64,000 bases of DNA, from positions 124,001 to 188,000 of the IMG/VR virus record IMGVR_UViG_3300035182_002586, one strand, 5' to 3'. Made by a program: the position numbers and the translations under genes. This document shows, in pieces, positions 3,377 to 51,521 of this stretch (its first letter is position 1; each line of letters begins with the position of its first letter). The notes beneath the pieces are model-generated. The model was not told the origin of the DNA. It made no database searches and saw only the letters and a program-made list of their open reading frames with translations.

Positions 3377-3979
3377 TCACTGGTCTCCGTAGACTTCCTC
3401 GACCTGCTCCCGGGCCCTGGCCGCAGAGCGCTCGAAGTGCATCTGGACGGCCCCAATGATGGCCTCGGGGATGCCCGCCGAACGCATCTGCTCTTCCCAC
3501 CCCGCACTCGGGATGTCCCCGCCAAACATGGGGTCGGCCTCGCCCACCCAGAACATCGCCGGGTCGCTGTAGACGTTGCCGTTGGGCGTCTCCAGGTAGG
3601 GCCAGACCTCCAACGGGCTATCTCGACAACAGCCGCAATTACGGCGAAGATCGAACCGATCGACGCGACCGTTCACCTCCTTCGTGTAGAAGGCGATCTT
3701 CTTCCAGCGGCCTTCCTGACGGAGAAGCCCAGGGAACTCCGCGAAGAGAGCGGCGAGCTTGTCAGCTTCCTCCAGCTTGGTCGCAGCTTCCTTGCGAAGA
3801 CTCTCGATCTGCCGAGGAACTGCGAAGCGAACGGCGTCCTCCTGGTCCTTGCGGATCTTCTCCCACCGAGCCTTCTCCTCGGCTTCCTTCGCCTCGCGCG
3901 CAGCCGTCTCCTCGGGGGTTTCCTTCGGGAGGTTGTCCGTCAGCGCCTTCGCGAGACGGCGTACGAGCTTCTTGCTCAT
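3377..3979 (-). CDS. hypothetical protein (CGCC motif)
   Basis: ORF from MSKKLVRR; codon bias. Confidence 0.7.
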   Translation of the reverse strand: MSKKLVRRLAKALTDNLPKETPEETAAREAKEAEEKARWEKIRKDQEDAVRFAVPRQIESLRKEAATKLEEADKLAALFAEFPGLLRQEGRWKKIAFYTKEVNGRVDRFDLRRNCGCCRDSPLEVWPYLETPNGNVYSDPAMFWVGEADPMFGGDIPSAGWEEQMRSAGIPEAIIGAVQMHFERSAARAREQVEEVYGDQ

Positions 3980-3990
3980 GGGCTTGTCGG

Positions 3991-5187
3991 TCACGATGCA
4001 CCTCCGAGCCACGTACGTGCGTACGCGAATGCCTTCTCCATACCCTCGGCCGAGTGCTCGAAGAACTGGTTCTCGACCTTGCCGTCCCGGCGAAGGCACA
4101 ACTTGATCGGACCGACCTTCACACCCCACTCGACCTCGATGCTGTCCTTGCTCTTCCGAGCAATCTCCCGACACCAGCGGGTCTCGCTGACCGTCTCGTC
4201 CGGGCACCACCCCTTGTAGGTGAACCCGATCGAGTCGTGGGAGGCCGGGGTGAAGGGGGCTTCCTTCTCCAGCTTGGTGGTCGTGAGGTAGAGAGGGTCG
4301 GTGGTCTTGAACTCCGCCTTCCACGCCTCGTACTTGCGGTTCGACTCCTCGCGGCGAATCCGGCGGGCCTTCTCCTCTTCGGAGACCCACTCCTCGACCA
4401 GAACGAGCTGGAGCCCCTCGCGCTTGAACGCCTTCGTGGCGTTCACCGTGGCAGGTTTCTCCGTCTCGTCCTCGTCGTCATCATCGTCATCGCTGTGGTC
4501 CATCGTGTCGAAGCACTTGATGGAGCCGTCGGTCCCGAACTCCGGCCAGCGATCGTCGTCGTCGATGTAGGTCTCGTCCCCGTCGTCCCCGATGACCTTG
4601 AGCATCGGCCACCCGGCCATGGGGTCGGAGAAGTCGTAGAACTGGAACTCGTACGGGCAGGCCCACACGCACCCGGCGACGACCAGGAGCTTCGAGGCCG
4701 CGTCGTACCGGTGCTGGACCCAACAGAAGCCGACCCCCTGCCCGGCCTCCGTCGGAAGGTGGTCCCTGCGCGCCCCTGTGTCCAGCTCGATGACCGTCTG
4801 CCCTTGATAGTCCTCACCACAGACGAGGAAGTCCCCCTTCGGGTGATTCTCGACCCACGAGAACGGGAACGAGCCGTAGTTGCGCTGGACCTCGGCCATC
4901 GGGGTGTCGGACCCGATGGCGTAGACGAGCCCCTGAGAGTAGCTCCACGACCCCGGCGACGTGGCGAACGGGGTCACCACGAGCTTGTACTTCCCCGAAG
5001 GGGAGACGTGCTCCTTGCGAGCCTCGACGTTCGCGTTCTCCGGGACGAAGTACGCCGCCTTCCGCATCTTACGGTACGCGCTCTGAACCTCTTTCGGGAG
5101 GGCCTTGAACGCTTCGCTCAGAGCCTCCTTGGTGAGAGACGCCGCCTTCTCCACGAGCGCGTGGGCCTGGTCGAGCATGGTGGACAT
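3991..5187 (-). CDS. hypothetical protein (beta-rich)
   Basis: Long ORF, ggagg RBS, coupled to the upstream gene. Confidence 0.75.
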   Translation of the reverse strand: MSTMLDQAHALVEKAASLTKEALSEAFKALPKEVQSAYRKMRKAAYFVPENANVEARKEHVSPSGKYKLVVTPFATSPGSWSYSQGLVYAIGSDTPMAEVQRNYGSFPFSWVENHPKGDFLVCGEDYQGQTVIELDTGARRDHLPTEAGQGVGFCWVQHRYDAASKLLVVAGCVWACPYEFQFYDFSDPMAGWPMLKVIGDDGDETYIDDDDRWPEFGTDGSIKCFDTMDHSDDDDDDEDETEKPATVNATKAFKREGLQLVLVEEWVSEEEKARRIRREESNRKYEAWKAEFKTTDPLYLTTTKLEKEAPFTPASHDSIGFTYKGWCPDETVSETRWCREIARKSKDSIEVEWGVKVGPIKLCLRRDGKVENQFFEHSAEGMEKAFAYARTWLGGAS

Positions 5188-6559: not shown

Positions 6560-7474
6560 ATGAAGCCCTTCGACTTCCCGCTAGCAGACCTGCACCGACA
6601 CCTGGACGGATCGCTCCGGCCGGAGACGATCCTGGAGCTGGCGGAAGCACAGGGCTACCCGCCGCCGAGCCTCGACAAGCTCCGGTTCCAGCCTCGTATG
6701 GGGCTGGAAGACGCGCTCAACCGCTTCGGTTACATCCTGTGTCTCCTCCAGCACCCGGGGGACGTGCGCCGTGTCGCGTCGGAAATCTGTGAGGACGCCG
6801 CCGCCGACGGAGTGACGACCCTGGAGATCCGGTTCGCTCCGCAGCTCCACGGTGGGGCGCCGATCGAAGAGATCGTAGAGGCGGTTGTCGAGGGGGTGGC
6901 CGGGCGCGCCGGGGTCATCCTCTGCGCCCTCCATGGGGACCCTCCGGAAGTCGCGAAGAAGCTCGTCGAGGTCGCCATCCCGAGGAAAGGCGTCGTAGGC
7001 ATCGACCTCGCAGGGTGCTCTACGCCTCATCATAGCTTCACGATGAAGGACTACGTGACCGCCTTCCGGCGCGCTGAGGAGCACGGGATCGGGCGAACGG
7101 TGCACGCGAGTGAGGGTGGGCCCGCAACCGAGGTCCGGGACGCCATCGAGCTGCTCCACGCCCAACGGATCGGCCACGGGACCATGATGTCCTACGACAT
7201 GAGCGTCGTGGAGCTGGCCCGTGAGCGTGGGGTCGTCTTCGAGGTCTGCCTCACGTCGAACGTCCACACGGGCGTCATCTCCGAGCTGGTCTACCACCCG
7301 GTCAACGCCTGGCTCGCGTGTGGGATCCGCGCCGTCATCTGCCCGGACAACACGTTCTTCTCGAACGTCTCCTCGTCGCAGGAGCACCTGAACGCGCTCT
7401 CCATCCCCGCCATCAGCGAGGACACCTTGCGTACGATGGTCACGTGGGGGCACGAAGCCGCGTTCCGACGTTAG
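6560..7474 (+). CDS. add: adenosine deaminase family protein
   Basis: DLHRHLDGS, EIRFAP, VHASEG, RIGHG, EVCLTSN and PDN motifs. Confidence 0.9.
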   Translation: MKPFDFPLADLHRHLDGSLRPETILELAEAQGYPPPSLDKLRFQPRMGLEDALNRFGYILCLLQHPGDVRRVASEICEDAAADGVTTLEIRFAPQLHGGAPIEEIVEAVVEGVAGRAGVILCALHGDPPEVAKKLVEVAIPRKGVVGIDLAGCSTPHHSFTMKDYVTAFRRAEEHGIGRTVHASEGGPATEVRDAIELLHAQRIGHGTMMSYDMSVVELARERGVVFEVCLTSNVHTGVISELVYHPVNAWLACGIRAVICPDNTFFSNVSSSQEHLNALSIPAISEDTLRTMVTWGHEAAFRR

Positions 7475-15646: not shown

Positions 15647-15727
15647 TCCGGGATAGCCTAATGGCAAGGCACACGGCTGTTAACCGTGCGGGGAAACCCA
15701 TTCTAGGTTCGAGTCCTAGTCCCGGAG
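15647..15727 (+). tRNA. tRNA-Asn(GTT) with long variable arm
   Basis: ctgttaa loop; ggg-aaa-ccc hairpin in the variable region. Confidence 0.85.
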
Positions 15728-15732
15728 CTACT

Positions 15733-15974: not shown

Positions 15975-16055
15975 GCCGGGGTCGCTCAGTGGTAGAGCAG
16001 CAGTTTTGTAAACTGCCGTGGAGACACATCGCGGGTTCGATCCCCGCCCTCGGCT
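15975..16055 (+). tRNA. tRNA-Thr(TGT) with long variable arm
   Basis: tttgtaa loop; gtg-gaga-cac variable hairpin. Confidence 0.85.
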
Positions 16056-16097
16056 CTAGCTCGGCGCTCCCCCCTTGGGGTGGGAGCATCGGGGAAC

Positions 16098-16279: not shown

Positions 16280-16367
16280 TGCGGGGATGCTAGCAACGGC
16301 TGCTGGTCGGGCTCATAACCCGATGCCTCCAGGTCAAGTAGGGTTCGACTCCCTTCCCCCGCTACCA
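16280..16367 (+). tRNA. tRNA-fMet(CAT)-like with enlarged variable region
   Basis: 1:72 mismatch, GGG/CCC anticodon stem, ctcataa loop, CCA. Confidence 0.75.
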
Positions 16368-25934: not shown

Positions 25935-26456
25935 GTGAAGACCTGTACAAAATGCGGGGACTCTAAATCTCCTACCATGTTCTACGCGCGGCGCGCCTCT
26001 TGTAAGGAGTGCGACAAGGCCGCTTCCAGAGAACGCTCGAAGTCAGGTCCTCCTAGAACTCGGTCTGCACAAACCAAAGAGAAGAGTAACTGTCGTCTTA
26101 AGCAACGGCGACGCGATCCCAAAGAACGTGCCACTTTCATCTTGAAGGATACTCGTTCTGCCGATCGTCGCAAGGGACTGGAGAACGACCTGACTCGATC
26201 GTTCATCGAGTCAGCGATCTCAAGTGGGTGTGTATACTGCGGTGAGAACGAGCTGAAGATGACTCTCGATCGGATTGACAACACAATCGGACACGTTCAA
26301 ACGAACGTGGTCGCTGCGTGCGTCCGGTGTAACTACATGCGACGAGACATGCCTTACGCAGCGTGGACCCGACTCGTCCCGCTCATCAAACAGCTCCGAG
26401 AAGAGGGGTTGTTTGGCGCTTGGGTGTGCGACTGCGTGACGCGCGGTGGTGTATGA
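25935..26456 (+). CDS. HNH-type endonuclease
   Basis: CTKC..CKEC; CVYCG...LDRIDN..GH...NVV.AC..CN; paralog of the 31950 gene. Confidence 0.88.
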   Translation: MKTCTKCGDSKSPTMFYARRASCKECDKAASRERSKSGPPRTRSAQTKEKSNCRLKQRRRDPKERATFILKDTRSADRRKGLENDLTRSFIESAISSGCVYCGENELKMTLDRIDNTIGHVQTNVVAACVRCNYMRRDMPYAAWTRLVPLIKQLREEGLFGAWVCDCVTRGGV

Positions 26457-26854: not shown

Positions 26855-28873
26855 ATGAACATGAACGCGAACAACCCCAACGAGAAGCTCGGTCCCGCCG
26901 AGAGGATCATCCAGACGGTCCTCGCCTACTCCGACCACATGGTCCACAACCGCCCGGGCGTCCTCACGAAGGACCCGGGTTCCGCGATCGGCGTCAAGTG
27001 GACGTACGTGACGCACAAGGTCGAGCCGAAGCCGGGCGCTGCTCCGGTCGCGGCCGCGCCGGCTGCCCCGAGGGTCAAGCGTGAGAAGGGCGCCAAGCGC
27101 GACCCGAACGCGCCCAAGGTCCCGAAGGTCAAGCGTCCGCCGATCCCGGACGGCATCAAGGTCGTCTACCAGCTCACGAAGGCGGGCAAGAAGACCATCC
27201 GCACGCGTCTCGGCGTCCTCCAGGACGACGGCAAGACGGTGAAGGCCGACAACGGCGTCACTATCGGCGAGTACCGTCCGGCGGGGCTCTTCCCGGAGGT
27301 CGCGGCCTGGATGTACAAGCAGGTCGCGGACGTCTGGAAGATCGACAACGAGTTCGCGGCGCGGTGGGCAAGCTACGCGTTCGGCCAGGAGCACCGTGAC
27401 CTCAAGGTCATCCTGGCGGCGTTCATGCTCGTCCAGAGCCGCAAGGGCGATCCGGTCCTCGACGGAGGCAAGGTCGCGTTCCTCGACGAGGACTACCGCG
27501 ACGTGGGTGAGGCGATGATGCTCATCCGCGAGAAGGGGCAGAAGGACCTCAACCCGAAGCTCCTGCTCCGCATCCGTGACCTGCTCACGATCCCGGCCGT
27601 CGCCGAGGTCAACCGCGAGCTGGGTTTCGGCCGCAGCGCCCGCAAGCCGTTCTACGGCCGGTGGGAGAAGGCGGTCGAGAAGTGGCTGCGGCACCGCGAG
27701 GAGAACCCGAAGCTCCTCCAGGGCCTCGTGAAGGCGGGCTTCCGCTCGACCGTCATGGAGCTGGCGTGCGCCATCGGTTACAAGCCGGAGACCCCGAAGT
27801 TCTTCGAGATCCTCCGGTGGAAGCAGGCGCAGGCGAAGGATGGGCGCCGGGCCCTCGACATCGGCAAGGCCGTCACGGCTGCCGAGACGTGGGAGGGGTT
27901 CACCGAGCAGCAGATCTGCGAGACGATCGTTCGTACCAAGCCCAACTACAAGCGCGTCATCGGGCTCATCCCGAAGGCCGTGGGGCTCACGCGGGCCATC
28001 GTCGCGGCGACCATCGAGGCTGGCGGGTTCTCGAACAAGGACCTGATCCAGTTCACGCCGACCCTGGAGGAGCTGGGCCTCCTCAACGTGCAGGACGTGC
28101 GTGAGCGGTGGGAGAAGGCGATGCGCGAGGCCGACGACATGCGTGCAGCGAACATCGCGCTGCGCGTCAAGTCCAAGGCGGTCGCGGAGAAGCTCCAGGA
28201 CGCGGCCGATACCGCCATCAAGGCGGCGGTGGCCGAGGTCGTGAAGGGCCTCCGGATCTACGTCGTCGTCGACCGTTCGGGCTCCATGGATGGTGCGATC
28301 GAGGCGGCCAAGAGCCACATCGGACGCTTCCTCCAGGGCTTCCCGGCAGACAAGCTGCACGTCTCCATCTTCAACACCGTGGGCCGCGAGGTGCAGATCA
28401 AGCACGCCTCGGCTGCGGGCGTCGAGAACGCCTTCCGGGGCATCCAGGCGGAGGGTGGGACGAACCATGCGGATGGCGTCAAGGTGCTCTCGAAGTACAA
28501 GCCGGCCGACGACGAGGACGTGCTGATGATCTTCATCGGCGACGAGGAGGACTCGCACCAGCACTTCGTGCCGACGGTCCAGGCTTCTGGACTCCGGCCG
28601 ATGGCCTTCGGCCTCGTGCGTGTCCTCGGTCGGCAGAGTCACGGGCGTGGCATGGCGGTGCGCAACACCGCGCAACTCCTCGGCATCCCGTGCTTCCAGA
28701 TCGACGAGAAGACGTTTGCGGACCCGTACGCGATCCCGCGCACGATCCGCAACCTCGTCGCGGCGACCCCGGTGGGGGCCGTCACGACCGCTGCTCCGCA
28801 GCGTGTCCGTGAGACCCTCGTGGACACGATCCTCAAGACGGACGTGCTCAAGAAGCCGGCCTGGGCCGCCTAG
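26855..28873 (+). CDS. Ro60-like protein (TROVE-like helical region plus C-terminal vWA)
   Basis: vWA MIDAS motifs DRSGSM, GGT and GDEED are clear; the TROVE-like assignment of the basic helical N-terminal region is inferred from architecture. Confidence 0.75.
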   Translation: MNMNANNPNEKLGPAERIIQTVLAYSDHMVHNRPGVLTKDPGSAIGVKWTYVTHKVEPKPGAAPVAAAPAAPRVKREKGAKRDPNAPKVPKVKRPPIPDGIKVVYQLTKAGKKTIRTRLGVLQDDGKTVKADNGVTIGEYRPAGLFPEVAAWMYKQVADVWKIDNEFAARWASYAFGQEHRDLKVILAAFMLVQSRKGDPVLDGGKVAFLDEDYRDVGEAMMLIREKGQKDLNPKLLLRIRDLLTIPAVAEVNRELGFGRSARKPFYGRWEKAVEKWLRHREENPKLLQGLVKAGFRSTVMELACAIGYKPETPKFFEILRWKQAQAKDGRRALDIGKAVTAAETWEGFTEQQICETIVRTKPNYKRVIGLIPKAVGLTRAIVAATIEAGGFSNKDLIQFTPTLEELGLLNVQDVRERWEKAMREADDMRAANIALRVKSKAVAEKLQDAADTAIKAAVAEVVKGLRIYVVVDRSGSMDGAIEAAKSHIGRFLQGFPADKLHVSIFNTVGREVQIKHASAAGVENAFRGIQAEGGTNHADGVKVLSKYKPADDEDVLMIFIGDEEDSHQHFVPTVQASGLRPMAFGLVRVLGRQSHGRGMAVRNTAQLLGIPCFQIDEKTFADPYAIPRTIRNLVAATPVGAVTTAAPQRVRETLVDTILKTDVLKKPAWAA

Positions 28874-29215: not shown

Positions 29216-30214
29216 ATGAGCTGGAAGGACTTGCTACAGACGGAGGGTGAGACCGTCATCGCCCCTTGGGTCGAGGGCAAAGTTCTTCGCTCGGTCGATC
29301 GCACGTGGATGATCGAGGGGCGCCGTCCCCCGGAGCCCGGTTGGCACCGCTTCACCATCACGGCCCGCAAGGCCCGGTGGGAGAAGGCGGTCGACCCGCA
29401 GCCGGAGCTGCTCGTCGATGTCCAGCGTGGCTACCTGGTCGGTGACCGCCTCGTCCGGAACGACGCTCGTGTGGACCCGGACCCCGCGCTCATCACCGAG
29501 CAGTCGGAGCCCATCCATCTCGTCGAGCCCGGACTCGACCGCTTCGTACCCATCATCGCGGGCCGTGGCTTCGAGGACGGGCCCCTGATCTACCAGGGCC
29601 AGGACATGCCCTCGGGCCCCGAGGAGAGCGTCCTCCAGGCGTTCCTGGAGCGCCACATCAGCGTCAACGGCATTCCCGGCGTCACCCCCGCCCTCGACGC
29701 GGCTTTCCGCATGGAGAGCTGGCAGAGGTTGGAGGCCGACCGTCGAAGGGCTGAGATCGAGCGTCGACTCCGCGAGGAGGAAGAGAAGCGGCAGCGCGAA
29801 GAGCGCCGGCAGCAGCTCGTCCAGCAGCTCGGGGACGGTGCGGGACGCCGCCAAATGGCTCTCGTCGACTTCGCGGCCGCTGCTACGGCAGCTCTCGCGG
29901 TTGGAGGCGCGACGTACCTCGACCACCGGCGCTCTGCCGTCCGGGGGGAGATGGTGGTTCGGTTCCGGGTTCAGAACCGGAGCTTCGAGTGCACCTGCGA
30001 GGAGAAGACGCTCGCCATCGTCGACGCGGGTATCTGCCTCATCAACCACAACACCGGCGAGAAGGGCGACACCTACTTCACGCTGGAGTCGCTGCCTGCT
30101 GTCATCGCTGAGGCGGTCCGCAAGCACAAGCTCGTCGTCTTCCGTCATGTCGGGGGTGGTGATCAGCACCACGACGACCACGACGATCGGGATGACGAAG
30201 ACGAGTTCGACTGA
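29216..30214 (+). CDS. coiled-coil protein with a possible E2 (UBC)-like C-terminal domain
   Basis: DAGICL...FTLESLPAVIAEA resembles the E2 GxICL active-site segment; lies within the E1/Ubl/JAB cluster. Confidence 0.55.
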   Translation: MSWKDLLQTEGETVIAPWVEGKVLRSVDRTWMIEGRRPPEPGWHRFTITARKARWEKAVDPQPELLVDVQRGYLVGDRLVRNDARVDPDPALITEQSEPIHLVEPGLDRFVPIIAGRGFEDGPLIYQGQDMPSGPEESVLQAFLERHISVNGIPGVTPALDAAFRMESWQRLEADRRRAEIERRLREEEEKRQREERRQQLVQQLGDGAGRRQMALVDFAAAATAALAVGGATYLDHRRSAVRGEMVVRFRVQNRSFECTCEEKTLAIVDAGICLINHNTGEKGDTYFTLESLPAVIAEAVRKHKLVVFRHVGGGDQHHDDHDDRDDEDEFD

Positions 30215-30240: not shown

Positions 30241-30648
30241 ATGATGGAAGCAGGCGTCGTCGTCGACATCCACGGAGAGGCCCTCCACTGGCACTTGCCG
30301 GAGGGTCGATCCGGGGGGTCGCTCCCGGACCACGTGGCCAAGCTCCCCGCGTCCGAGGAAGCGTTCCGCAAGGCGAACCTCTGGTACGTCTTCTGGGACA
30401 ACCGGGACAGCATCAAGGGGTTCGCCCACAGCCATCCCGGCGGTGGGGTCCCGGGCCCCTCGTACACGGACGTGACGACCTTCGCCGCTATCGAGGATGC
30501 CCTCGGGCAGCGCCTCGACTGGTGGATCACGAGCGACCAGGCGGTCGTCGTGTGCAGGTGGGCGGGCCCTCATCGGCTCACCTACCAGGTGGAGCGCCTC
30601 GCGGAAGACCCCTCGTGGGTTGCCGAGCTGAGACGCCTCAGCAAGTGA
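30241..30648 (+). CDS. JAB/MPN+ metalloprotease
   Basis: N-terminal E, then GFAHSHPGGGVPGPSYTD (HxH-x7-S-x2-D). Confidence 0.88.
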   Translation: MMEAGVVVDIHGEALHWHLPEGRSGGSLPDHVAKLPASEEAFRKANLWYVFWDNRDSIKGFAHSHPGGGVPGPSYTDVTTFAAIEDALGQRLDWWITSDQAVVVCRWAGPHRLTYQVERLAEDPSWVAELRRLSK

Positions 30649-30696
30649 CTGGCCTCCGGGCCCAACGAATCAAAGTGGAAGGGAGGGCTAACGCCC

Positions 30697-30957
30697 ATGA
30701 TCAACGCGAACGAAGCAATGGTGAACGTGACGTGGAACCGGCAGAATGGGAACCTCGTGGACCCGGTGCCGCTCGACTCGGCGGATGGCGACGTCCGCCA
30801 GTGGATCACGGAGGCGGTGCGCGCGGGTAGCGTGCCCGGTATCCCGGCCGACGGGGCTGCGGACTTCCACGACTACGTGATCGACCGGTTCGCGCCGACC
30901 GACGCGCGCCCGTACAACCTCATCTCGGTCCGCCCGAAGACCCCCTTCGGCGCGTGA
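30697..30957 (+). CDS. ubiquitin-like (beta-grasp) protein
   Basis: 86 aa, beta-beta-alpha-beta pattern, C-terminus RPKTPFGA with a penultimate Gly; lies between JAB and E1. Confidence 0.7.
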   Translation: MINANEAMVNVTWNRQNGNLVDPVPLDSADGDVRQWITEAVRAGSVPGIPADGAADFHDYVIDRFAPTDARPYNLISVRPKTPFGA

Positions 30958-30969
30958 GAAGGGAGGCTC

Positions 30970-31311
30970 ATGCTCAACGAGAACGTGCATGAGCCTCCGC
31001 TCCACGTCCGGCACGCGACCTTGGAGCGCCTGTCTTCGGACAGCGAGTTCAAGGTCCACTGCCCTGCGTGTACGGACGGCCTACTCATCGTGAGCCGTAA
31101 CCTCGATCGCGTCATCTCGTCGCTGGATCGCTGCATCTCTTGTGGGCAGGTCATCGTCTACGAAGACGAGACGATCGCGCACGAGAAGGTGCGTCGAATG
31201 CCCGAAGAGGCTGTGCGGGAGTACGCCGAGGGGTACGCAAAGGTCCTCGAAGGGAAGGCCCCCAAGAAGACCTCCCTGTGGGACCGTCTGCTGGGAGACG
31301 AAGACCTCTAG
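30970..31311 (+). CDS. zinc-ribbon protein
   Basis: CPAC...CISC; ggagg RBS. Confidence 0.65.
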   Translation: MLNENVHEPPLHVRHATLERLSSDSEFKVHCPACTDGLLIVSRNLDRVISSLDRCISCGQVIVYEDETIAHEKVRRMPEEAVREYAEGYAKVLEGKAPKKTSLWDRLLGDEDL

Positions 31312-31328
31312 CCGGTGTACAGGGGAAC

Positions 31329-31904
31329 ATGAAGAACATCGTCGTCATCGGCGTCGGAGCCCTCGGGTCTCACGTCGTCCAGTTCCTCCGCAGCGCGGGC
31401 GCGACGATCAAGGTCATCGACTTCGATCGCGTCGAGCAGAAAAACGTCCTCTCGCAGTTCCACGGCAAGCCGAACGTCGGCAAGTCCAAGGTCATGGCCC
31501 TCCAGCAGACGATGCAGTTCCTCTGGGGGGTGAAGATCGAGGTCGTGCCGCACAAGCTCGTCACCGACAACGCCGAGAACGTCATCGGCAAGCCGGACCT
31601 CATCATTGACTGCCTCGACAACGGGGCCGCCCGCCGCGTCGTGCAGACGTACGCTCGGGCCAAGAACATCCCGTGTCTCCACGGGGCGCTCGCGGCCGAC
31701 GGTGGCTTCGCCCGCGTCGTGTGGGACGAGAAGTTCGTCATCGACGACGAGGGCACCGGAGCCGGCGCGACCTGCGAGGACGGCGAGCATCTCCCCTTCA
31801 TCAGCCTCGCGTCCGCGCACATCGCGCGCGCCGCACAGTCCTTCCTCAAGGACGGCAAGAAGGGCGGCTTCGAAATCAACCCCGGCGGTTCGACCGGGAC
31901 TTGA
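31329..31904 (+). CDS. ThiF/E1-like adenylyltransferase
   Basis: GVGALGS, IDFDRVEQKN, GKSK, DCLDN, candidate catalytic Cys in ATCED. Confidence 0.9.
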   Translation: MKNIVVIGVGALGSHVVQFLRSAGATIKVIDFDRVEQKNVLSQFHGKPNVGKSKVMALQQTMQFLWGVKIEVVPHKLVTDNAENVIGKPDLIIDCLDNGAARRVVQTYARAKNIPCLHGALAADGGFARVVWDEKFVIDDEGTGAGATCEDGEHLPFISLASAHIARAAQSFLKDGKKGGFEINPGGSTGT

Positions 31905-31949: not shown

Positions 31950-32459
31950 ATGCTGCGAACTTGTACGAAGTGTCTGGGTTCGAAGCCTGAGAAGTCTTTC
32001 GCAAAGACCTCCTCTGGGTACCGTCGTAGGGTCTGCCACACGTGCCAGAGCCGCGTAAAACGTGGTCAAGCCGATCCGACTCTTCGACGGGACTACCAAC
32101 GCAAACACCGCGAAGAGAACCCCCACATCTACGTCCTTGTTGATTGTCGGATGTCCGATCGTCGCAACAAGAGAACGGGTAACGACCTAGACACACTCTT
32201 CGTTGAGGCAGCCCTCAGCAACGGGTGTCAGTACTGTGGGGATACATCGCTCCGTATGACCCTGGACCGTATCGACAACACTCGTGCCCACGCGAAAGAC
32301 AACGTGGTTCCGTGTTGCCTCCGGTGTAACTACATCCGTGGGTCGATGCCCTACGAAGCCTGGCTTCATATGGTCCCAACGGTACGCGAGGCGAGAGAAC
32401 AGGGACTCTTTGGGGACTGGCGCTCGCAGCCTCTCAACAAGAGGCCGAAAGACCCTTGA
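31950..32459 (+). CDS. HNH-type endonuclease
   Basis: CQYCG...LDRIDN..AH...NVVPCC..CN; paralog of the 25935 gene. Confidence 0.88.
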   Translation: MLRTCTKCLGSKPEKSFAKTSSGYRRRVCHTCQSRVKRGQADPTLRRDYQRKHREENPHIYVLVDCRMSDRRNKRTGNDLDTLFVEAALSNGCQYCGDTSLRMTLDRIDNTRAHAKDNVVPCCLRCNYIRGSMPYEAWLHMVPTVREAREQGLFGDWRSQPLNKRPKDP

Positions 32460-32562
32460 CAAGCTCATCAGTCGAGTCCATGGTTGCTCCCGAGCTGGTG
32501 GGGCGAACCTCCGAAAGAAAAGGCACCGAGTCGGCAGCGAGTCGGTGTACAACCAGCAACAC

Positions 32563-32699
32563 GGGGAATACTGAGGGATGGTCCCTCACCGGAACGTAAA
32601 TCTGGCGCTAACGCACCTCGGCATCGCACCTCGCACCCGCAAGGGCGCACATCGCGGTTCCTACACGCTTTCTTGGTTCGAATCCAAGGTTCCCCACCA
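32563..32699 (+). ncRNA. tRNA-mimic RNA A1 (Tyr-like GTA) with module in the variable loop
   Basis: ggggaat/gttcccc+ACCA, D arm, ccgga-acgtaaa-tctgg, module 32629-32650, T arm. Confidence 0.8.
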
Positions 32700-32841
32700 C
32701 TCGCGACCATTAGACTGACCTCACACGCATATATGGGTTCGAGTCCCATTCCGCCCCCTCGGGGCAGATCGCCCAACTGGTAGGGCACTCGTCAGAAAAA
32801 CGAGCTTGCAAAAGCAACCAGGTCTGTCACTCGGACGCGAG
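32700..32841 (+). ncRNA. YrlA-like circularly permuted tRNA-mimic RNA B1 (GAA loop)
   Basis: Terminal stem ctcgcg/cgcgag; order is T arm, looped acceptor, D arm, anticodon arm. Confidence 0.8.
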
Positions 32842-32879
32842 TAACTTTTTTCTCTCAGCCACGACTCAGGACACGTTAC

Positions 32880-33021
32880 GCCCGTTCACAGAGGATCGGT
32901 TCCTCGCCTCCCTTCCACGGAGGAGCGAAAGCTCTAACTCCAGATCTGCCCCTCGCATCCGCAAGGACGCACCCCGCAGTTCTCACAAGACATCTCGGTT
33001 CGACTCCGAGGACGGGCTCCA
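32880..33021 (+). ncRNA. tRNA-mimic RNA A2 (Gly-like TCC)
   Basis: gcccgtt/gacgggc+TCCA, cctcc-cttccac-ggagg, module 32951-32972. Confidence 0.8.
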
Positions 33022-33057
33022 CACTCTCTCGCTCTTTGCAGCTCTCTCGACACTTTC

Positions 33058-33182
33058 GGCGGATCGGGGCTAGGGCCCCCACTTTCCCTCATACGGAACG
33101 ATCCGGCTCGTCTCCTCGCACCCGCAAGGGCGCACCCCCGACGAGCCCACAAGCCTGCCTGGTTCGAATCCAGGATCCGCCT
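33058..33182 (+). ncRNA. tRNA-mimic RNA A3 (Met-like CAT)
   Basis: ggcggat/atccgcc, ttcc-ctcatac-ggaa, module 33114-33135. Confidence 0.78.
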
Positions 33183-33184
33183 CT

Positions 33185-33312
33185 GGGGCGACCATCACGC
33201 ACTGCTCACACGCAATATCGTCCAATGGTAGGACGGTGGCCTTAAAAGCCGCTTGTACAGGTTCGAGTCCTGTTACTGCAACCAAAGTCCAGCAGTGCAC
33301 CTCGGACGCCCC
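33185..33312 (+). ncRNA. RNA C1: module strands clamping a complete tRNA-like unit (TAA, 33211-33284)
   Basis: ggggcg/cgcccc and gcactgct/agcagtgc stems around a cloverleaf ending ACCA. Confidence 0.78.
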
Positions 33313-33337
33313 TAACTTCTCTCGTCACGTCACTCTT

Positions 33338-33471
33338 GGAGGATCATAGAGGGTCGGTCCCTCACCTGCCATTTCAAGCAGGAGCCTAACAGCTCCCAGG
33401 ACTGCACCTCGCATCCGCAAGGACGCACCAAGCAGTTCTCACACGCCCCGGTTCGACTCCGGAATCCTCCG
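33338..33471 (+). ncRNA. tRNA-mimic RNA A4 (8-nt loop catttcaa)
   Basis: ggaggat/atcctcc, module 33407-33428, T arm. Confidence 0.78.
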
Positions 33472-33504
33472 CCGCCCCGCAAGGGGTTGTTACTGACACG
33501 AATG

Positions 33505-33644
33505 TGGCCGTCACAGGGGATCGGTTCCCCACCTGCTTGCAACGCAGGAGCCTAACAGCTCTTCCAGGATCGCACCTCGCACCCGCAAGGGAGCACTCAG
33601 CGGTTCTCACACGCCAACCGGTTCGACTCCGGGACGGCCAGCCA
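33505..33644 (+). ncRNA. tRNA-mimic RNA A5 (Cys-like GCA)
   Basis: tggccgt/acggcca+GCCA, cctgc-ttgcaac-gcagg, module 33575-33596. Confidence 0.8.
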
Positions 33645-33677
33645 CACTAGTTGCAGGGTTTGCTCTCGTCACGCATA

Positions 33678-33816
33678 TGCCCGTCACAGGGGATCGGTTC
33701 CCCACCTGCAATTGGAGCAGGAGCCTAAACAGCTCCCAGGATCACACCTCGCACCCGCAAGGGCGCATCCCGTGGTTCTCACACGCAAATCCGGTTCGAC
33801 TCCGGGACGGGCGACC
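33678..33816 (+). ncRNA. tRNA-mimic RNA A6 (Gln-like TTG)
   Basis: tgcccgt/acgggcg, cctgc-aattgga-gcagg, module 33747-33768. Confidence 0.8.
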
Positions 33817-33960
33817 GCTTCGCGACCATCAGACCGACCTCACAAGCAATGTTGGTTCGAATCCAACCTCCCCCTCCATTTACGGGGGAGTAGCCTAACT
33901 GGCAAAGGCACTCGTCAAATAAACGAGCAATCAACCAGGTCTGTCACTCGGACGCGAAGC
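33817..33960 (+). ncRNA. YrlA-like circularly permuted tRNA-mimic RNA B2 (AAT loop)
   Basis: gcttcgcg/cgcgaagc terminal stem; same order as B1. Confidence 0.8.
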
Positions 33961-33999
33961 TACTACTCCAGCCGGACCCCCACATAGGGTCCGGCTCAT

Positions 34000-34074
34000 G
34001 GTGACCATAGCCTAAAGGTAAGGCACTGGATTGTGGCTCCAGCTATACGGGTTCGATTCCCGTTGGTCACCCCA
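34000..34074 (+). tRNA. tRNA-His(GTG)
   Basis: G-1:C73, ttgtggc loop, CCA. Confidence 0.92.
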
Positions 34075-34154
34075 CGGACTCTCCATCGTGCGCCGGACAG
34101 TGCGCAGGGCGGCAGGGACCGACCAATCACACAGAACGGAACGGAGAAGAGGTC

Positions 34155-34667
34155 ATGAAGGTCACGGGCTACGCCTTCCGAGAGGCGATCAGGCAGCACG
34201 AGCTGCGGGCCAAGGCGGCAGCGGACACGTTCGACGGAACCCTCAAGAAGTTCCCGGATGAGAAGAAGCCGAGCCCGCAGGCCGTCATCGAGCAGTTCGC
34301 GACCTCGGAGCGCGCCGTCGCGCGGCTCCAGTCGGCGCAGGCGCAGTACAACCTCAAGGTATCCGTGGACGTGCTCGGCGAGCACATGACGCTCTCCGAA
34401 GCGGTCAAGCTGGTCGGCGGCGTCGGTCGCATCGAGAAGATGTGGCGGAACGCTGCGGGCGGGAAGAAGGACCGCTACGGCTACGGGAACGCGCAGGACG
34501 AGCGCGACCCGTCGAAAGTCTTCGCCGTCGAGACCGTCTCGACCGACGAGGCCGTCAAGCTCGCCTCCGTGGCGGCCAAGCGTGCCGGGGCCTTCCGCTC
34601 CGCCATCGCGACGGCCAACGCCCGCGAGGTCGAGATCGAGAACTTGGACCCGGCGCTCTTCGAGTAG
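34155..34667 (+). CDS. helical protein resembling the DIP1984/septicolysin-like family
   Basis: RLQSAQAQYNLKV...MTLSEAV...AIATANA pattern, recognised from memory. Confidence 0.5.
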   Translation: MKVTGYAFREAIRQHELRAKAAADTFDGTLKKFPDEKKPSPQAVIEQFATSERAVARLQSAQAQYNLKVSVDVLGEHMTLSEAVKLVGGVGRIEKMWRNAAGGKKDRYGYGNAQDERDPSKVFAVETVSTDEAVKLASVAAKRAGAFRSAIATANAREVEIENLDPALFE

Positions 34668-35594: not shown

Positions 35595-35681
35595 GTGTAC
35601 GTTGCGCGTCATGGGCGCAGACAACGGGACACCAAGCACACGGGTCGAAGCACTCATCAACGCCTGTTGGTGCCCCCGCTG

Positions 35682-36389
35682 ATGGCCATCCTCCCCCTCG
35701 ACACCGCAGAGTGGCCGTCGCGTCGCTACAAGGTCGTCTATGCAGATCCTTGTTGGAAGTACTACGGGGACCCTGATAAGGACCAGGCGGCGGGCAAACA
35801 CTACAACGGCATGACCCTCGATGAACTGTCAGCTCTTCCGGTGGGCCGCCTCTTGGCGCCTCCCGCTGTGGTCTTCATGTGGACCACCTCGCCCAAGTTG
35901 AGTGAGAGTCTCGACCTCATCAAGAGGTGGGGGCTGCACTACATCGGCGTCGCCTTCGTGTGGGTCAAGACCACCAACGATGGACGCGTCATCCACGGGC
36001 AAGGGGTCCGCCCTTCCATCACGAAGTCCACGACGGAGTACGTGCTGGCCGCCTCCACGGTGAAGCAAGGGCGCCCTCTGCCGCTCCTCACGGAAGCGCA
36101 GCCACAGGTCATCCTCGCGCCTCGCCCCGGCGGGCTGCACTCCAGCAAGCCTGTGGAGGTCCGAGAGGGCATCGAGGCTCTCTACGGGCCCATGCCGAGG
36201 GTCGAGTTGTTCTGCCGTGGTGAGCCCGCCCCCGGGTGGGACGGGTGGGGTAACGAAGCTGGAGACCTGACGGTCCAGCCGGAGCTGGCGCAGTCTCCCG
36301 CCTTGCGAGAGAAGCTCGTGAAGCAAGCCGAGGAGGGATCGATGCGAGAGGTATTCGACCTCGCGATGTCCCTCGACGACGAAGAGTAG
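35682..36389 (+). CDS. MT-A70 family adenine methyltransferase
   Basis: VVYADPCW (DPPW variant), FMWTT, FVWVK, HSSKP, VELFCR...GWDGWGNE. Confidence 0.88.
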   Translation: MAILPLDTAEWPSRRYKVVYADPCWKYYGDPDKDQAAGKHYNGMTLDELSALPVGRLLAPPAVVFMWTTSPKLSESLDLIKRWGLHYIGVAFVWVKTTNDGRVIHGQGVRPSITKSTTEYVLAASTVKQGRPLPLLTEAQPQVILAPRPGGLHSSKPVEVREGIEALYGPMPRVELFCRGEPAPGWDGWGNEAGDLTVQPELAQSPALREKLVKQAEEGSMREVFDLAMSLDDEE

Positions 36390-36409: not shown

Positions 36410-37264
36410 ATGGCCAGATCTCCGATGGGAGCCGCAAAGGATGCGGCGAGAGAAGCTCGTGCGCGCACGAAGCTCCGGAAAGAGGTCCGGGAAGAGCTGT
36501 ACGAAGAGATCGAGGCGAAGGTCCGCGTCGAGGTGCGAGAGCAGCTCGAACGAGAAGTGCGGGACGAGATCGCCACCAAGATCCGGGACGAGCAGGCGTC
36601 GGGCCCCGTGGTTCAGGCTCACCTGGACAACGCCAACGAGCTGCTCCAGGGGATCCAGCTCGACGCAGAGGCGCACGTGGTGGCGTCCACGCGAGAGGCT
36701 CAGGCCCTCGTGGTCCCTCTGCGATCGTCGAAGCGGGTGCGGAACTTCCTGGAGGTGTTCCTCTACCTGACGGGGATCCCGCTCTCCATCACCCTTCTCG
36801 TGGTCCTGCATACGGGCTTCCTGAGCATCGCTTTCCTCGTCCCCATGGTCATCTGGTACTACGGGGTGCAGGCTGTCTCGGAGTCGAACGAGAAGCACTT
36901 TGCAGCCATGCAGCAGGACATCGAGCACGCAGAGGAGGTAGCTCGAAGCTACCGAGCCCTCTCGAATCGCGCGGCTGCGATCCGGGCCGAGTTGCCGAGC
37001 CTTCCGAACACGGCGCGGCTCAAAGCGCGGCTGCGAACGGTGACCTCTGAGAGGGCGAGGATCACGCAGTGGGCGAACGCAGGTCTTCGTGGGCTCGACC
37101 AAGCCAGGTCCGAGGTGCGGGATCGGATGCTCGGGGAGGCCGACCTAGACCGCATCCTGGCCATCCCCACGGACCACCGGCAGCGTGTAGCCCCTCTCCC
37201 CAACTACGACGAGCAGGCTGAGGCGGAAGCCGAAGTGGAAGAGGCCCTACGAGGGCGCGCATGA
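36410..37264 (+). CDS. coiled-coil membrane protein (2 TM)
   Basis: ORF preceded by GGTGTA; two hydrophobic segments. Confidence 0.7.
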   Translation: MARSPMGAAKDAAREARARTKLRKEVREELYEEIEAKVRVEVREQLEREVRDEIATKIRDEQASGPVVQAHLDNANELLQGIQLDAEAHVVASTREAQALVVPLRSSKRVRNFLEVFLYLTGIPLSITLLVVLHTGFLSIAFLVPMVIWYYGVQAVSESNEKHFAAMQQDIEHAEEVARSYRALSNRAAAIRAELPSLPNTARLKARLRTVTSERARITQWANAGLRGLDQARSEVRDRMLGEADLDRILAIPTDHRQRVAPLPNYDEQAEAEAEVEEALRGRA

Positions 37265-37887
37265 AGGACTTCCCGACCATCCCCACCGTGAGGGAGTTCC
37301 TCCCAAGCGACCTCACCTGGCACGTCTTCGACAAGATCGACGGCTCGAACATCCGCGCCGAGTGGAACCGCAAGCAGGGCTTCTACAAGTTCGGTTCCCG
37401 CAAGCAGCTCCTCGCAACGGACTCGGGGCTCCTCAACGAGTCCCGCGAGCTGGTGCTCAACAAGTACGGCGACCCTCTCTCGGCCATCTTCCGCGCACAG
37501 AGGTACGAGAGTGCGGTCGCGTTCTTCGAGTTCTACGGCCCGAGTTCGGCGTTCGGGGCGCACGTCATGGACGAACCCCACAAGGTGACCCTGATCGACG
37601 TGAGCCCGTACAAGCGGGGCATCCTCCCGCCCACGGAGTTCCTCCGTCACTACGGCCACCTTGAAGTACCGGCGCTCATCCACCAAGGCCCCATCGACGA
37701 GGAGTTCGTCGAGAACGTCCACGAGGGGCGCCTGGAGGGGGTGACGGACGAAGGGGTGATCTGCAAGGCCAAGGCTGACCGGAAGACCGAGGTTCCCGTC
37801 ATGTGCAAGATCAAGAGCCGTGTGTGGCTCGACCGGTTGCGCACCTACTGCAAGGACGACCAGGCCCTCTTCGATCGCCTCAAGTAG
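37261..37887 (+). CDS. ATP-dependent RNA ligase-like nucleotidyltransferase
   Basis: DKIDGSN (KxDG), FGSR, FEFYG, EGVICK and KIK motifs; no OB domain. Confidence 0.8.
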   Translation: MKDFPTIPTVREFLPSDLTWHVFDKIDGSNIRAEWNRKQGFYKFGSRKQLLATDSGLLNESRELVLNKYGDPLSAIFRAQRYESAVAFFEFYGPSSAFGAHVMDEPHKVTLIDVSPYKRGILPPTEFLRHYGHLEVPALIHQGPIDEEFVENVHEGRLEGVTDEGVICKAKADRKTEVPVMCKIKSRVWLDRLRTYCKDDQALFDRLK

Positions 37888-51159: not shown

Positions 51160-51515
51160 GGGAGCGCCCCGGTTTCGACGGGGGAAGGAAGTTTTCGCTA
51201 GCGTGTAGGCCCGCGCTCGTAGGGCCTCAAAAGATTCGAGCCGAAACAAACGCCAACGACAACGGCACCGTCATCACCGCTCTCAAGGCGGCTGCGTGAC
51301 CGATCCCGCCCCAAGGTAGTCCTCGTAGGGGCATATGGGATCGTCAAACACTAGGGCTGGCCAAAGCCTCGGGCTCCCGGGGGTCAGGCGAGACAAGCAG
51401 GGAAGCTAGGTCGCGGCCAAATCTGCGAACCCCGTCGAGGGGGCAAGCTCGAATACGCACGTAGAAAGCGACGACAGAGATCTCTCGGACGCGGGTTCGA
51501 CTCCCGCCGCTTCCA
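51160..51515 (+). ncRNA. ssrA: tmRNA; tag (A)ANDNGTVITALKAAA* at 51252-51299
   Basis: gggagcg/cgcttcc acceptor with G3:U70, GGTTTCGAC, GGAC-GCGGGTTCGACTCCCGC, ANDN...AAA tag. Confidence 0.95.
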
Positions 51516-51521
51516 CCCATC

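What the first reader, a model, noticed from the sequence alone, without database searches (positions are those of the whole stretch)
32563..33960. One RNA module with covariation, in three topologies including exact circular permutants
Type A (6 copies) is a full cloverleaf whose variable loop holds helix-CUC-GC-A-[CCC/UCC GCAA GGG/GGA]-C/A-GC-AY-helix-(C/U)ACA(C/A)G, followed by the T arm. Type B (32700, 33817) is the same molecule opened at the GCAA loop and closed at the acceptor end. Its order is GCG-A-CC-AU-helix-CACA(C/A)GC, T arm, looped acceptor, D arm, anticodon arm, CCAG-helix-CUC-GG-A-CGC. The 2-bp pair covaries (GC:GC in A, GG:CC in B and C), the cap stem covaries (CCC:GGG, UCC:GGA, CGC:GCG), and the flanking helix differs per copy yet stays paired. 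The type B order matches YrlA Y RNAs. Seeing permuted and unpermuted forms side by side suggests how Y RNAs could arise from tRNAs (inference).
Basis: seen in the sequence. Interest (0 to 1): 0.9.

Follow-up and report, generated by a model that had tools for sequence, protein, structure and literature searches.

The report
Portable RNA module on phage tRNA-like RNAs
A huge phage encodes a cluster of nine tRNA-shaped RNAs that all carry the same small, undescribed structured module wired in at different points, including circularly permuted versions. They resemble Y RNAs in design but belong to no described family.

Summary
Window 32563-33960 contains nine co-oriented structured RNAs (not ten). 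Six are tRNA-like cloverleaves with a ~50-nt module in the variable region. Two are circularly permuted tRNA-like RNAs whose ends lie in the module. In one, the module halves flank a real tRNA.

The module is an 8-bp helix, an internal loop with an invariant CUC, and a variable cap or terminal stem. A 3' ACA(A/C)G junction follows. Covariation across 33 copies from 12 phage contigs supports it strongly. It recurs in about 45 further IMG/VR contigs and in two MAG contigs. A fourth form with no tRNA body occurs in relatives.

No Rfam family reaches threshold. YrlA matches only the T / closed-acceptor / D part, and its defining motif is absent.

In 39 of 52 protein-anchored relatives the RNAs lie next to, and co-oriented with, one conserved gene cassette. 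The cassette's VWA protein has Ro60 as its best fold match but shows no TROVE sequence signal.

My best reading, at moderate confidence, is a Y-RNA-like design: a shared protein-binding handle on tRNA-mimic domains. Transcripts, RNA ends and the binding partner are all untested.

The parts
32563..32699 (+). Type A1. tRNA-like RNA with a 7-bp acceptor and encoded ACCA. Anticodon-like loop ACGUAAA. Module in the variable region (R1 hit 32611-32688).
   Evidence: (75.7 bits)
32700..32842 (+). Type B1. Circularly permuted tRNA-like RNA: module 3' half, T arm, acceptor closed by a CUC loop, canonical D arm, anticodon-like arm, small hairpin, module 5' half. The ends pair as a terminal stem, which is followed by a U-run.
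   Evidence: (YrlA partial hit, 26.5 bits)
32880..33021 (+). Type A2. tRNA-like with a UCC anticodon loop and encoded UCCA. Module at 32933-33010.
   Evidence: (82.7 bits)
33059..33184 (+). Type A3. tRNA-like with a CAU anticodon loop and no extra hairpin. Module at 33096-33174.
   Evidence: 79 bits; tRNA-Met in 71 of 72 deletion variants
33185..33312 (+). Type C. Module halves (terminal stem, internal loop, 8-bp helix) enclose a tRNA with anticodon UAA at 33211-33284. The ACACGC junction runs into the acceptor 5' strand.
   Evidence: (58.7 bits tRNA)
33338..33474 (+). Type A4. tRNA-like with an 8-nt anticodon-like loop. Module at 33389-33463.
   Evidence: z -4.3; 74.1 bits; no tRNA call
33506..33644 (+). 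Type A5. tRNA-like with a GCA anticodon loop. Module at 33557-33633.
   Evidence: 74.2 bits; tRNA-Cys in 63 of 72 variants
33679..33816 (+). Type A6. tRNA-like with the non-canonical loop AAUUGGA. Module at 33729-33806.
   Evidence: (79.6 bits)
33819..33959 (+). Type B2. Permuted tRNA-like RNA. The acceptor loop reads 3' strand, U, CCA, UUUAC, 5' strand.
   Evidence: (1800 of 2016 variants)
26855..28873 (+). 672-aa protein: N-terminal beta domain, helical repeats, and a VWA domain with an intact MIDAS motif (DxSxS). Candidate RNA partner. Best fold matches are Ro60/TROVE structures.
   Evidence: synteny
29216..30214 (+). 332-aa conserved cassette protein of unknown fold (beta-rich N-terminal domain, long helix, Cys/His-bearing C-terminal domain).
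   Evidence: no significant fold match
30241..30648 (+). JAB/JAMM-like peptidase (HSH...S..D motif).
30697..30957 (+). 86-aa conserved protein ending in FGA. A ubiquitin-like or sulfur-carrier role is inferred only from its neighbours.
31140..31904 (+). ThiF/MoeB-type E1-like adenylyltransferase. In most relatives the RNA cluster starts 90-180 nt after it.
31950..32459 (+). HNH / endonuclease VII-like gene inserted between ThiF and the RNA cluster. Present in this position in only some relatives.

Best explanation
The region is an operon-like cluster of phage non-coding RNAs built from two kinds of parts.

Part one is a portable module of about 45-50 nt. It has a helix H of 8 bp. At one end of H is a junction, CC-R on the 5' strand and N-ACA(A/C)G-C on the 3' strand. 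At the other end is an asymmetric internal loop, NN-CUC opposite A-NNN(N). A second helix follows, always starting with a G:C pair. That second helix is either a capped hairpin (type A) or the paired 5' and 3' ends of the RNA (types B, C and 'mini').

Part two is a tRNA-shaped domain, or in the 'mini' forms of relatives just a loop.

I propose that the module is a shared recognition handle for one protein and that the tRNA-like domain recruits or mimics a tRNA-binding partner. This is the design logic of Y RNAs. The best candidate for the handle-binding protein is the conserved neighbouring VWA protein with a Ro60-like fold.

Shown: the RNA structures, the four connectivities, covariation, conservation and the gene neighbourhood. 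Inferred: transcription and processing, protein binding, and the identity and role of the partner.
For: Module structure and covariation: for type A, and for 23 split forms (own-partner pairing 6.48 of 7 against 3.53 of 7 for cross-partners). Types B and C are conserved as classes across phages, with 24 of 31 and 25 of 31 predicted pairs showing compensatory changes.

The invariant nucleotides sit in single-stranded segments (CUC, ACA(A/C)G), while both helices vary freely. That pattern suits protein recognition.

The module attaches to the tRNA body at non-equivalent places: the variable region in A and B, the acceptor ends in C, and no body at all in 'mini'. Module and body therefore behave as independent units.

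Many bodies cannot decode. Loops are 8 nt or lack U33 in A1, A4, A6, B1 and B2. Type B acceptors are sealed by GAAA, UUCG or CUC loops in most phages.

Neighbourhood:
- In all 11 first relatives the cluster directly follows the cassette VWA / 332-aa protein / JAB / 86-aa protein / ThiF.
- In 39 of 52 protein-anchored loci R1 hits lie within 10 kb, and 91 of 91 hits are on the gene strand.
- In diverged lineages the cluster sits immediately upstream of the VWA gene instead.

The VWA protein's top Foldseek hits are Ro60/TROVE structures (E 6e-7 to 1e-5, 508-570 aligned columns). A diverged profile hits the phage phiLo TROVE protein collinearly across its helical and VWA parts at E 0.07.

Known phage and bacterial Ro60 genes have Y RNAs encoded beside them, with a stem / bulge / stem binding site and often a tRNA-like domain (PMC4201824, PMC12135203).
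Against: - No TROVE signal at sequence level in 30 close and 10 distant homologues.
- Foldseek TM-scores are only 0.2-0.28, on a model with pTM 0.45. VWA-only proteins score almost as well.
- The YrlA motif GNCGAAN0-1G is absent, and the conserved CUC-G lies on the opposite strand relative to YrlA's motif.
- Adjacency could be inherited synteny within one phage clade. In some phages a cluster lies more than 10 kb from the cassette (L003/L263, L028).
- There is no expression, end-mapping or binding data.
Confidence: 0.45

Rival explanations
1. The module is an RNA processing signal, functionally analogous to the archaeal bulge-helix-bulge motif or to T7-type RNase III hairpins. It marks where a nuclease, possibly followed by a ligase, cuts. 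On this reading interrupted (A), permuted (B) and leader/trailer-embedded (C) precursors all mature into working or two-piece tRNAs.
For: The same motif appears in the three contexts where BHB is used in archaea: inside a tRNA, at the ends of a permuted tRNA, and flanking an RNA. Units abut with no spacers. About half of type A copies encode N-CCA, and three of ten type B acceptor loops hold N-CCA followed by a spacer, as in permuted tmRNA genes. L007 type B gives a sub-threshold tmRNA_permuted hit of 31.3 bits. A3 and A5 become good tRNAs once the module is removed. An RNA ligase-like gene lies 3.3 kb downstream.
Against: 'Mini' forms have no tRNA to mature. Most type B acceptors are sealed by stable tetraloops without CCA. 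Many anticodon loops are non-canonical. Removing only the hairpin would leave about 15-20 extra nucleotides (CC-R and ACA(A/C)GC plus flanks) in the variable region. The geometry is not BHB: an 8-bp helix and 5 x 4-5 loops rather than 3-4-3. The ligase gene is not conserved next to the cluster.
Confidence: 0.2
2. The RNAs are substrates or cofactors of the adjacent ubiquitin-like / E1 / JAB cassette. One possibility is a sulfur-relay tRNA thiolation system of the Urm1-Uba4 or TtuB-TtuC kind, with the module directing the enzymes to these tRNA-like RNAs.
For: A ThiF/MoeB-type E1, a JAMM peptidase and an 86-aa protein ending in FGA lie directly upstream in every relative examined. The closest solved relatives of the E1 include MoeB, Uba4 and ThiF. 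All type A and B copies keep a canonical T loop.
Against: No PP-loop thiolase or other tRNA-modifying domain was detected in the cassette. The 332-aa protein has no family or fold match. Type C and 'mini' place the module away from any T arm. The role of the VWA protein is unexplained.
Confidence: 0.1
3. The RNAs are tRNA decoys or sponges against host tRNA-targeting defences (anticodon nucleases, tRNA-sensing systems). On this reading the module only stabilises or marks them.
For: The phage invests heavily in tRNAs, with 53 tRNA genes and a tmRNA in 64 kb. The bodies keep tRNA shape but often have degenerate anticodon loops.
Against: This does not explain the invariant module nucleotides, the 'mini' forms, or the link to the cassette. 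It overlaps with the best explanation rather than excluding it.
Confidence: 0.12
4. The module is a small self-cleaving ribozyme. Like hammerhead and twister, it would occur naturally in permuted forms depending on which stem is open.
For: The module occurs with either stem open or closed, its invariant nucleotides are in loops, and it sits between tightly packed RNA units.
Against: No match to any ribozyme family in Rfam 15 at E <= 10. No conserved pseudoknot or third stem was found. The conserved core is very small.
Confidence: 0.05

Closest known systems
YrlA / bacterial and phage Y RNAs (Rfam RF02553; Chen et al. 2014, PMC4201824; phage phiLo Yrl1/2, PMC12135203)
   Same: Modular design: a stem / internal loop / stem formed by the RNA ends, plus a tRNA-like domain. 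Type B has the same order (T arm, closed acceptor-like stem-loop, D arm). Several different RNAs share one stem module, and 'mini' resembles the YrlB type. The RNAs are encoded beside a helical-repeat + VWA protein.
   Different: Sub-threshold Rfam scores (24-26.5 bits against 69). No GNCGAAN0-1G / CGAA motif. The conserved CUC-G lies on the other strand. Type B keeps an anticodon arm. Types A and C have no Y RNA counterpart. The neighbouring protein has no TROVE sequence signature.
Circularly permuted tRNA genes (Cyanidioschyzon merolae) and two-piece (permuted) tmRNA genes
   Same: The gene order places the 3' half (T arm, acceptor 3' strand, sometimes CCA) before the 5' half. L007 type B gives a partial tmRNA_permuted hit.
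   Different: There is no BHB motif. The break point lies in a large variable-region module. Most acceptor loops are sealed tetraloops without CCA. There is no mRNA-like domain. The setting is a bacteriophage.
Class II tRNAs and tRNA-Sec (long variable arm)
   Same: Type A is a cloverleaf with an oversized variable region. L014 type A copies give sub-threshold tRNA-Sec hits of 32.6 and 20.4 bits. Ordinary tRNAs of this phage also carry short variable-arm hairpins.
   Different: The variable region is 55-70 nt and has its own conserved internal-loop motif. D arms are atypical. Several anticodon loops are non-canonical. tRNA detectors do not call the intact RNAs.
Phage T7-type RNase III processing hairpins
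   Same: Two short helices separated by an asymmetric internal loop, sited between units of a polycistronic phage transcript.
   Different: The stems are shorter (8 and 5-7 bp). The loop nucleotides are invariant, which RNase III sites do not require. The module occurs inside tRNA-like bodies. Not tested here.

Membership tests
YrlA (RF02553) | Reaches the Rfam gathering score (69 bits) | tested here: not met
   26.5 bits (window B1), 25 bits (L007 B) and 23.9 bits (L014 B, full model)
YrlA (RF02553) | Order T arm, acceptor-like closed stem-loop, D arm, with the 5' and 3' ends forming a stem / loop / stem | tested here: met
   Type B folds and cross-phage consensus. Rfam aligns model positions 30-81.
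YrlA (RF02553) | GNCGAAN0-1G motif near the 5' end (proposed Rsr contact; PMC4201824) | tested here: not met
   Absent from all nine RNAs. Some relatives have CUCGAACG, but on the 3' strand.
YrlA (RF02553) | Encoded next to a Ro60 / TROVE gene | tested here: inconclusive
   No Pfam TROVE hit. The neighbouring VWA protein has Ro60 as its top fold hits at low TM, and a profile hit to the phiLo TROVE protein at E 0.07.
YrlA (RF02553) | Bound by Ro60/Rsr in vivo | not testable with these tools
   Needs immunoprecipitation or EMSA
tRNA (RF00005) | Recognised as a tRNA by ARAGORN or the Rfam model | tested here: not met
   Intact types A and B are not called. After in-silico module removal A3, A5, partly A2, and rotated B1 and B2 are called. 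The tRNA inside type C is called.
tRNA (RF00005) | 7-nt anticodon loop with U33 and a purine at position 37 | tested here: inconclusive
   Met in A2, A3, A5 and the type C tRNA. Not met in A1, A4 (8 nt), A6, B1 or B2 (read from the sequences).
Permuted tRNA / two-piece tmRNA genes | 3' half upstream of 5' half, with CCA and an intervening segment between them | tested here: inconclusive
   The order is met in all type B. N-CCA plus spacer is present only in B2, L007 B and L017 B. The others have GAAA, UUCG or CUC closing loops.
Permuted tRNA / tRNA introns (archaeal/eukaryotic type) | Bulge-helix-bulge (3-4-3) motif at the junction | tested here: not met
   The module has an 8-bp helix and 5 x 4-5-nt loops.
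Small self-cleaving ribozymes (hammerhead, twister, HDV-like, pistol, hatchet) | Match to a family covariance model | tested here: not met
   No such hit at E <= 10 in 32400-34150
Ro60 / TROVE proteins (for the neighbouring 672-aa protein) | TROVE (HEAT-repeat ring) domain followed by a VWA domain with MIDAS | tested here: inconclusive
   VWA with DxSxS is present. A helical-repeat region precedes it. Ro60 structures are the top Foldseek hits but with TM 0.2-0.28. There is no TROVE HMM hit.

The most novel reading that the evidence does not exclude
Huge phages carry a highly diverged Ro60-like ribonucleoprotein system. Its RNA partners share a new binding module that has been grafted onto tRNA scaffolds in four connectivities: internal, circularly permuted, flanking, and stand-alone. 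On this reading the co-transcribed forms are living intermediates on the path from tRNA to Y RNA. They would also show that a protein-binding RNA module can be moved around a scaffold by natural circular permutation.
Probability: 0.3. Interest if true: 0.9.

Novelty: new variant of a known kind. Interest (0 to 1): 0.78.

Why it matters
If these RNAs are expressed, they form a widespread, undescribed class of structured RNA in very large phages. R1 finds 115 hits in the pattern-found IMG/VR loci (about 45 contigs) and 91 more in the protein-anchored loci, with some contigs in both sets. Covariation support is unusually clean.

One genome holding the same module in unpermuted, permuted, flanking and (in relatives) stand-alone forms is a rare natural experiment in RNA modularity. 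It makes a long-standing proposal directly testable: that Y RNAs derive from tRNAs. It also points to a conserved five-gene cassette (VWA/Ro-like protein, unknown protein, JAB, small protein, E1) as a candidate RNA-linked system in phage-host conflict or RNA quality control.

Tried and rejected
- **Exact-core scan.** Scanning IMG/VR for the exact core returned three chance hits inside a coding sequence (L001, L004, L005), which I discarded.
- **Loose helix descriptor.** A descriptor accepting 6 of 7 pairs was too noisy, so I replaced it with covariance model R1.
- **Phage database.** The INPHARED search found no related DNA beyond tRNA fragments. The only protein relative was Virus Rctr197k.
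- **TROVE link by sequence.** Pfam on the protein, on 30 homologues at E <= 10 and on 10 distant representatives all gave no TROVE hit. phmmer and hmmsearch against PDB gave VWA hits only, apart from E 0.07 to the phiLo TROVE protein.
- **The 332-aa cassette protein.** No family, PDB-sequence or fold match was significant. A possible E2-like C-terminal domain is my reading of the secondary structure only, and I make no claim for it.
- **Alignment A4.** It was too diverse for the search for related loci.
- **Genome-collection scan.** Only two MAG contigs (L163, L190) held real copies.
- **Weak Rfam hits.** Minus-strand 'freshwater-1' and Plastid-ycf2 hits look like chance or tRNA reverse complements.
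- **CTCGGACGC at 51484.** This is simply the tmRNA T arm.
- **Mobile repeat idea.** I considered a repeat inserted into tRNA genes and rejected it, because each copy has its own compensated helix sequences and the family is conserved across phages with 50-65% protein identity.
- **Literature.** Searches found no prior description of this family.
Full report
**Setting.** The window is a 63% GC stretch of IMG/VR contig IMGVR_UViG_3300035182_002586 (529 kb). Loci L002 and L006 are identical to it. It carries 53 tRNA genes and a tmRNA, all on the + strand. The finding lies in a 1.7-kb stretch that I read as non-coding, between an HNH/endonuclease VII-like gene (31950-32459) and a predicted gene at 34155-34667. 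A tRNA-His sits at 34001-34074.

**Observation.** The 20-nt core of the type A module occurs exactly six times and nowhere else in the window.
- Type A (six copies): acceptor stem, a D-like hairpin (5-bp stem, 5-nt loop containing GG), an anticodon-like arm, usually a small extra hairpin, the module, then a canonical T arm and the acceptor 3' strand.
- Type B (two copies): closed by a terminal stem. The order is module 3' half, T arm, looped acceptor, canonical D arm, anticodon-like arm, module 5' half.
- Type C (one copy): the module halves enclose the tRNA that ARAGORN and Rfam call at 33211-33284.

I count nine copies, not ten.

Deleting the module in silico turns A3 and A5 (and partly A2) into sequences that ARAGORN calls tRNAs. 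Rotating B1 and B2 to tRNA order and deleting the module does the same. The bodies are therefore tRNA-derived, and type B is genuinely permuted. Types A and B share architecture, not sequence.

**The family elsewhere.**
- Contig L003 carries the same RNAs, including a fourth form ('mini') in which the module halves close a short loop with no tRNA body.
- Loci fetched through the neighbouring VWA protein all carry a cluster on the same strand, with mixtures of A, B, C and mini.
- In L007, L008 and L009 I read a TTGACA-N17-TAnnnT promoter-like sequence just upstream of the cluster. In L008 and L009 I read a hairpin plus U-run just downstream (sequences; no scan was run on these loci).

An alignment of 33 type A modules plus T arms defines the module. 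The order is CC-R, helix H (8 bp), NN-CUC, a cap hairpin opening with G:C, A-NNN(N), the return strand of H, then N-ACA(A/C)G-C and the T arm.
- CUC is invariant. The first G of the cap and the ACA(A/C)G junction are conserved in at least 90% of copies.
- 86.9% of cells pair, against 62.4% in shuffles.
- 18 of 19 pairs show double changes, and 165 cells carry them.
- Slid controls stay at or below 50.5%.
- The bulged 2+3-bp GCAA cap seen in the window is a local variant. Most relatives have a plain 5-7-bp hairpin.

For 23 split forms, each helix strand pairs with its own partner at 6.48 of 7 positions, against 3.53 of 7 with other copies' partners. I chose the registers, so the bias favours 'own'. 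Types B and C are conserved as classes, with 24 of 31 and 25 of 31 predicted pairs showing compensatory changes.

Covariance model R1 finds:
- only the six type A copies as full hits in the window, plus 38 more in the first relatives;
- 115 hits at E < 1e-6 in about 45 further IMG/VR contigs, mostly 70-540 kb;
- real copies in two MAG contigs, binned as Methylobacter and Sorangium.

**Known families.**
- No Rfam 15 family reaches threshold.
- YrlA aligns to the T arm / closed acceptor / D arm part of type B at 24-26.5 bits, against a gathering score of 69.
- L007 type B also touches tmRNA_permuted (31.3 bits against 47), and L014 type A touches tRNA-Sec (32.6 bits against 47). These hits describe the shapes well but are not memberships.
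- The YrlA motif GNCGAAN0-1G (PMC4201824) is absent.
- The YrlA consensus printed shows a stem / internal loop / stem made by the RNA ends, as in types B, C and mini. However, its conserved motif lies on the 5' strand at the P1/loop boundary. Here the conserved CUC-G lies on the 3' strand.

**Neighbourhood.** Immediately upstream lies a five-gene cassette, conserved in all 11 first relatives while the downstream genes are not. Its genes are:
- a 672-aa VWA protein;
- a 332-aa protein of unknown fold;
- a JAMM-motif peptidase;
- an 86-aa protein ending in FGA;
- a ThiF/MoeB-type E1.

Anchoring on the VWA protein alone, 39 of 52 further loci have R1 hits within 10 kb. At least six of the 13 negatives are truncated contigs. 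All 91 hits are on the gene strand. In diverged lineages the cluster sits just upstream of the VWA gene rather than after ThiF. Some phages have a cluster elsewhere (L003/L263, L028).

The VWA protein model (pLDDT 78.5, pTM 0.45) has a beta domain, helical repeats and a VWA domain. Its best PDB fold hits are Ro60/TROVE structures, including the phage phiLo Ro60. The E-values run from 6e-7 to 1e-5 with more than 500 aligned columns, but TM is only 0.2-0.28. A diverged profile reaches the phiLo TROVE protein at E 0.07 across the helical plus VWA parts. Pfam finds no TROVE domain in any close or distant homologue. I treat 'Ro60-like' as a lead with roughly even odds.

**Mechanism.** Five observations argue that the module is an independent recognition handle and that most bodies are tRNA mimics rather than decoders:
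- The invariant nucleotides are single-stranded, while the helices vary freely.
- The module joins the tRNA body at non-equivalent sites.
- 'Mini' forms lack a body.
- Many anticodon loops are degenerate.
- Most type B acceptors are sealed by stable tetraloops.

This is how Y RNAs are built and used (PMC4201824, PMC12135203), and a candidate Ro-like protein is the conserved neighbour.

The main rival is a processing signal, analogous in use to the archaeal BHB motif. It accounts for the three contexts, the tight packing and the CCA-containing loops of some type B copies. It does not account for the mini forms, the sealed acceptors or the nucleotides that would be left in the variable region. 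A link to the adjacent Ubl/E1/JAB genes, a decoy role and a ribozyme remain possible at lower weight. Nothing here shows transcription, ends or binding.

**Verdict.** The Y RNA interpretation is partly supported as 'works like', not as 'is a member'. I found no prior description in Rfam 15 or in the paper library.

Noticed in passing
window 30241-31904: A JAMM-motif peptidase, an 86-aa protein ending in FGA and a ThiF/MoeB-type E1 form a conserved ubiquitin-like or sulfur-carrier-like set. They lie beside a VWA protein and a 332-aa protein with conserved Cys/His residues and no detectable fold relatives.
   Followed up: partly
window 15647-15728, 15975-16056, 16281-16363: Ordinary class I tRNAs of this phage (Asn GUU, Thr UGU, Met CAU) are 82-83 nt long because they carry a short 3-bp hairpin in the variable region. 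Variable-region insertions therefore seem a general habit of this genome's tRNAs.
   Followed up: partly
window 25935-26456 and 31950-32459: Two related HNH/endonuclease VII-like genes. The second sits between ThiF and the RNA cluster only in the window and a few relatives, which suggests a mobile homing-type insertion.
   Followed up: partly
window 32843-32852 and 33970-33996: A U-run directly follows the terminal stem of B1 (terminator-like). A strong 10-bp hairpin (z -5.6) lies between B2 and tRNA-His. U-rich tracts also follow several split-form RNAs in L007-L009.
   Followed up: partly
L163 (Methylobacter MAG contig, 16.8 kb) 3940-4489; L190 (Sorangium MAG contig) 6805-6883: Real copies of the module occur on short contigs binned into bacterial MAGs. 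These are either mis-binned phage fragments or host hints.
   Followed up: no
L028 3144-4343 (same 436-kb contig as L008): A second cluster of at least five type A modules lies elsewhere in the same phage, with no cassette gene inside the fetched locus.
   Followed up: no
window 35595-36389 and 37261-37887: An MT-A70-type methyltransferase and an RNA ligase-like gene lie downstream of the cluster. Neither has a homologue inside any of the 11 fetched relative loci.
   Followed up: partly
window 51160-51517: A phage-encoded tmRNA (tag ANDNGTVITALKAAA). L003 has one too, with a different tag.
   Followed up: no
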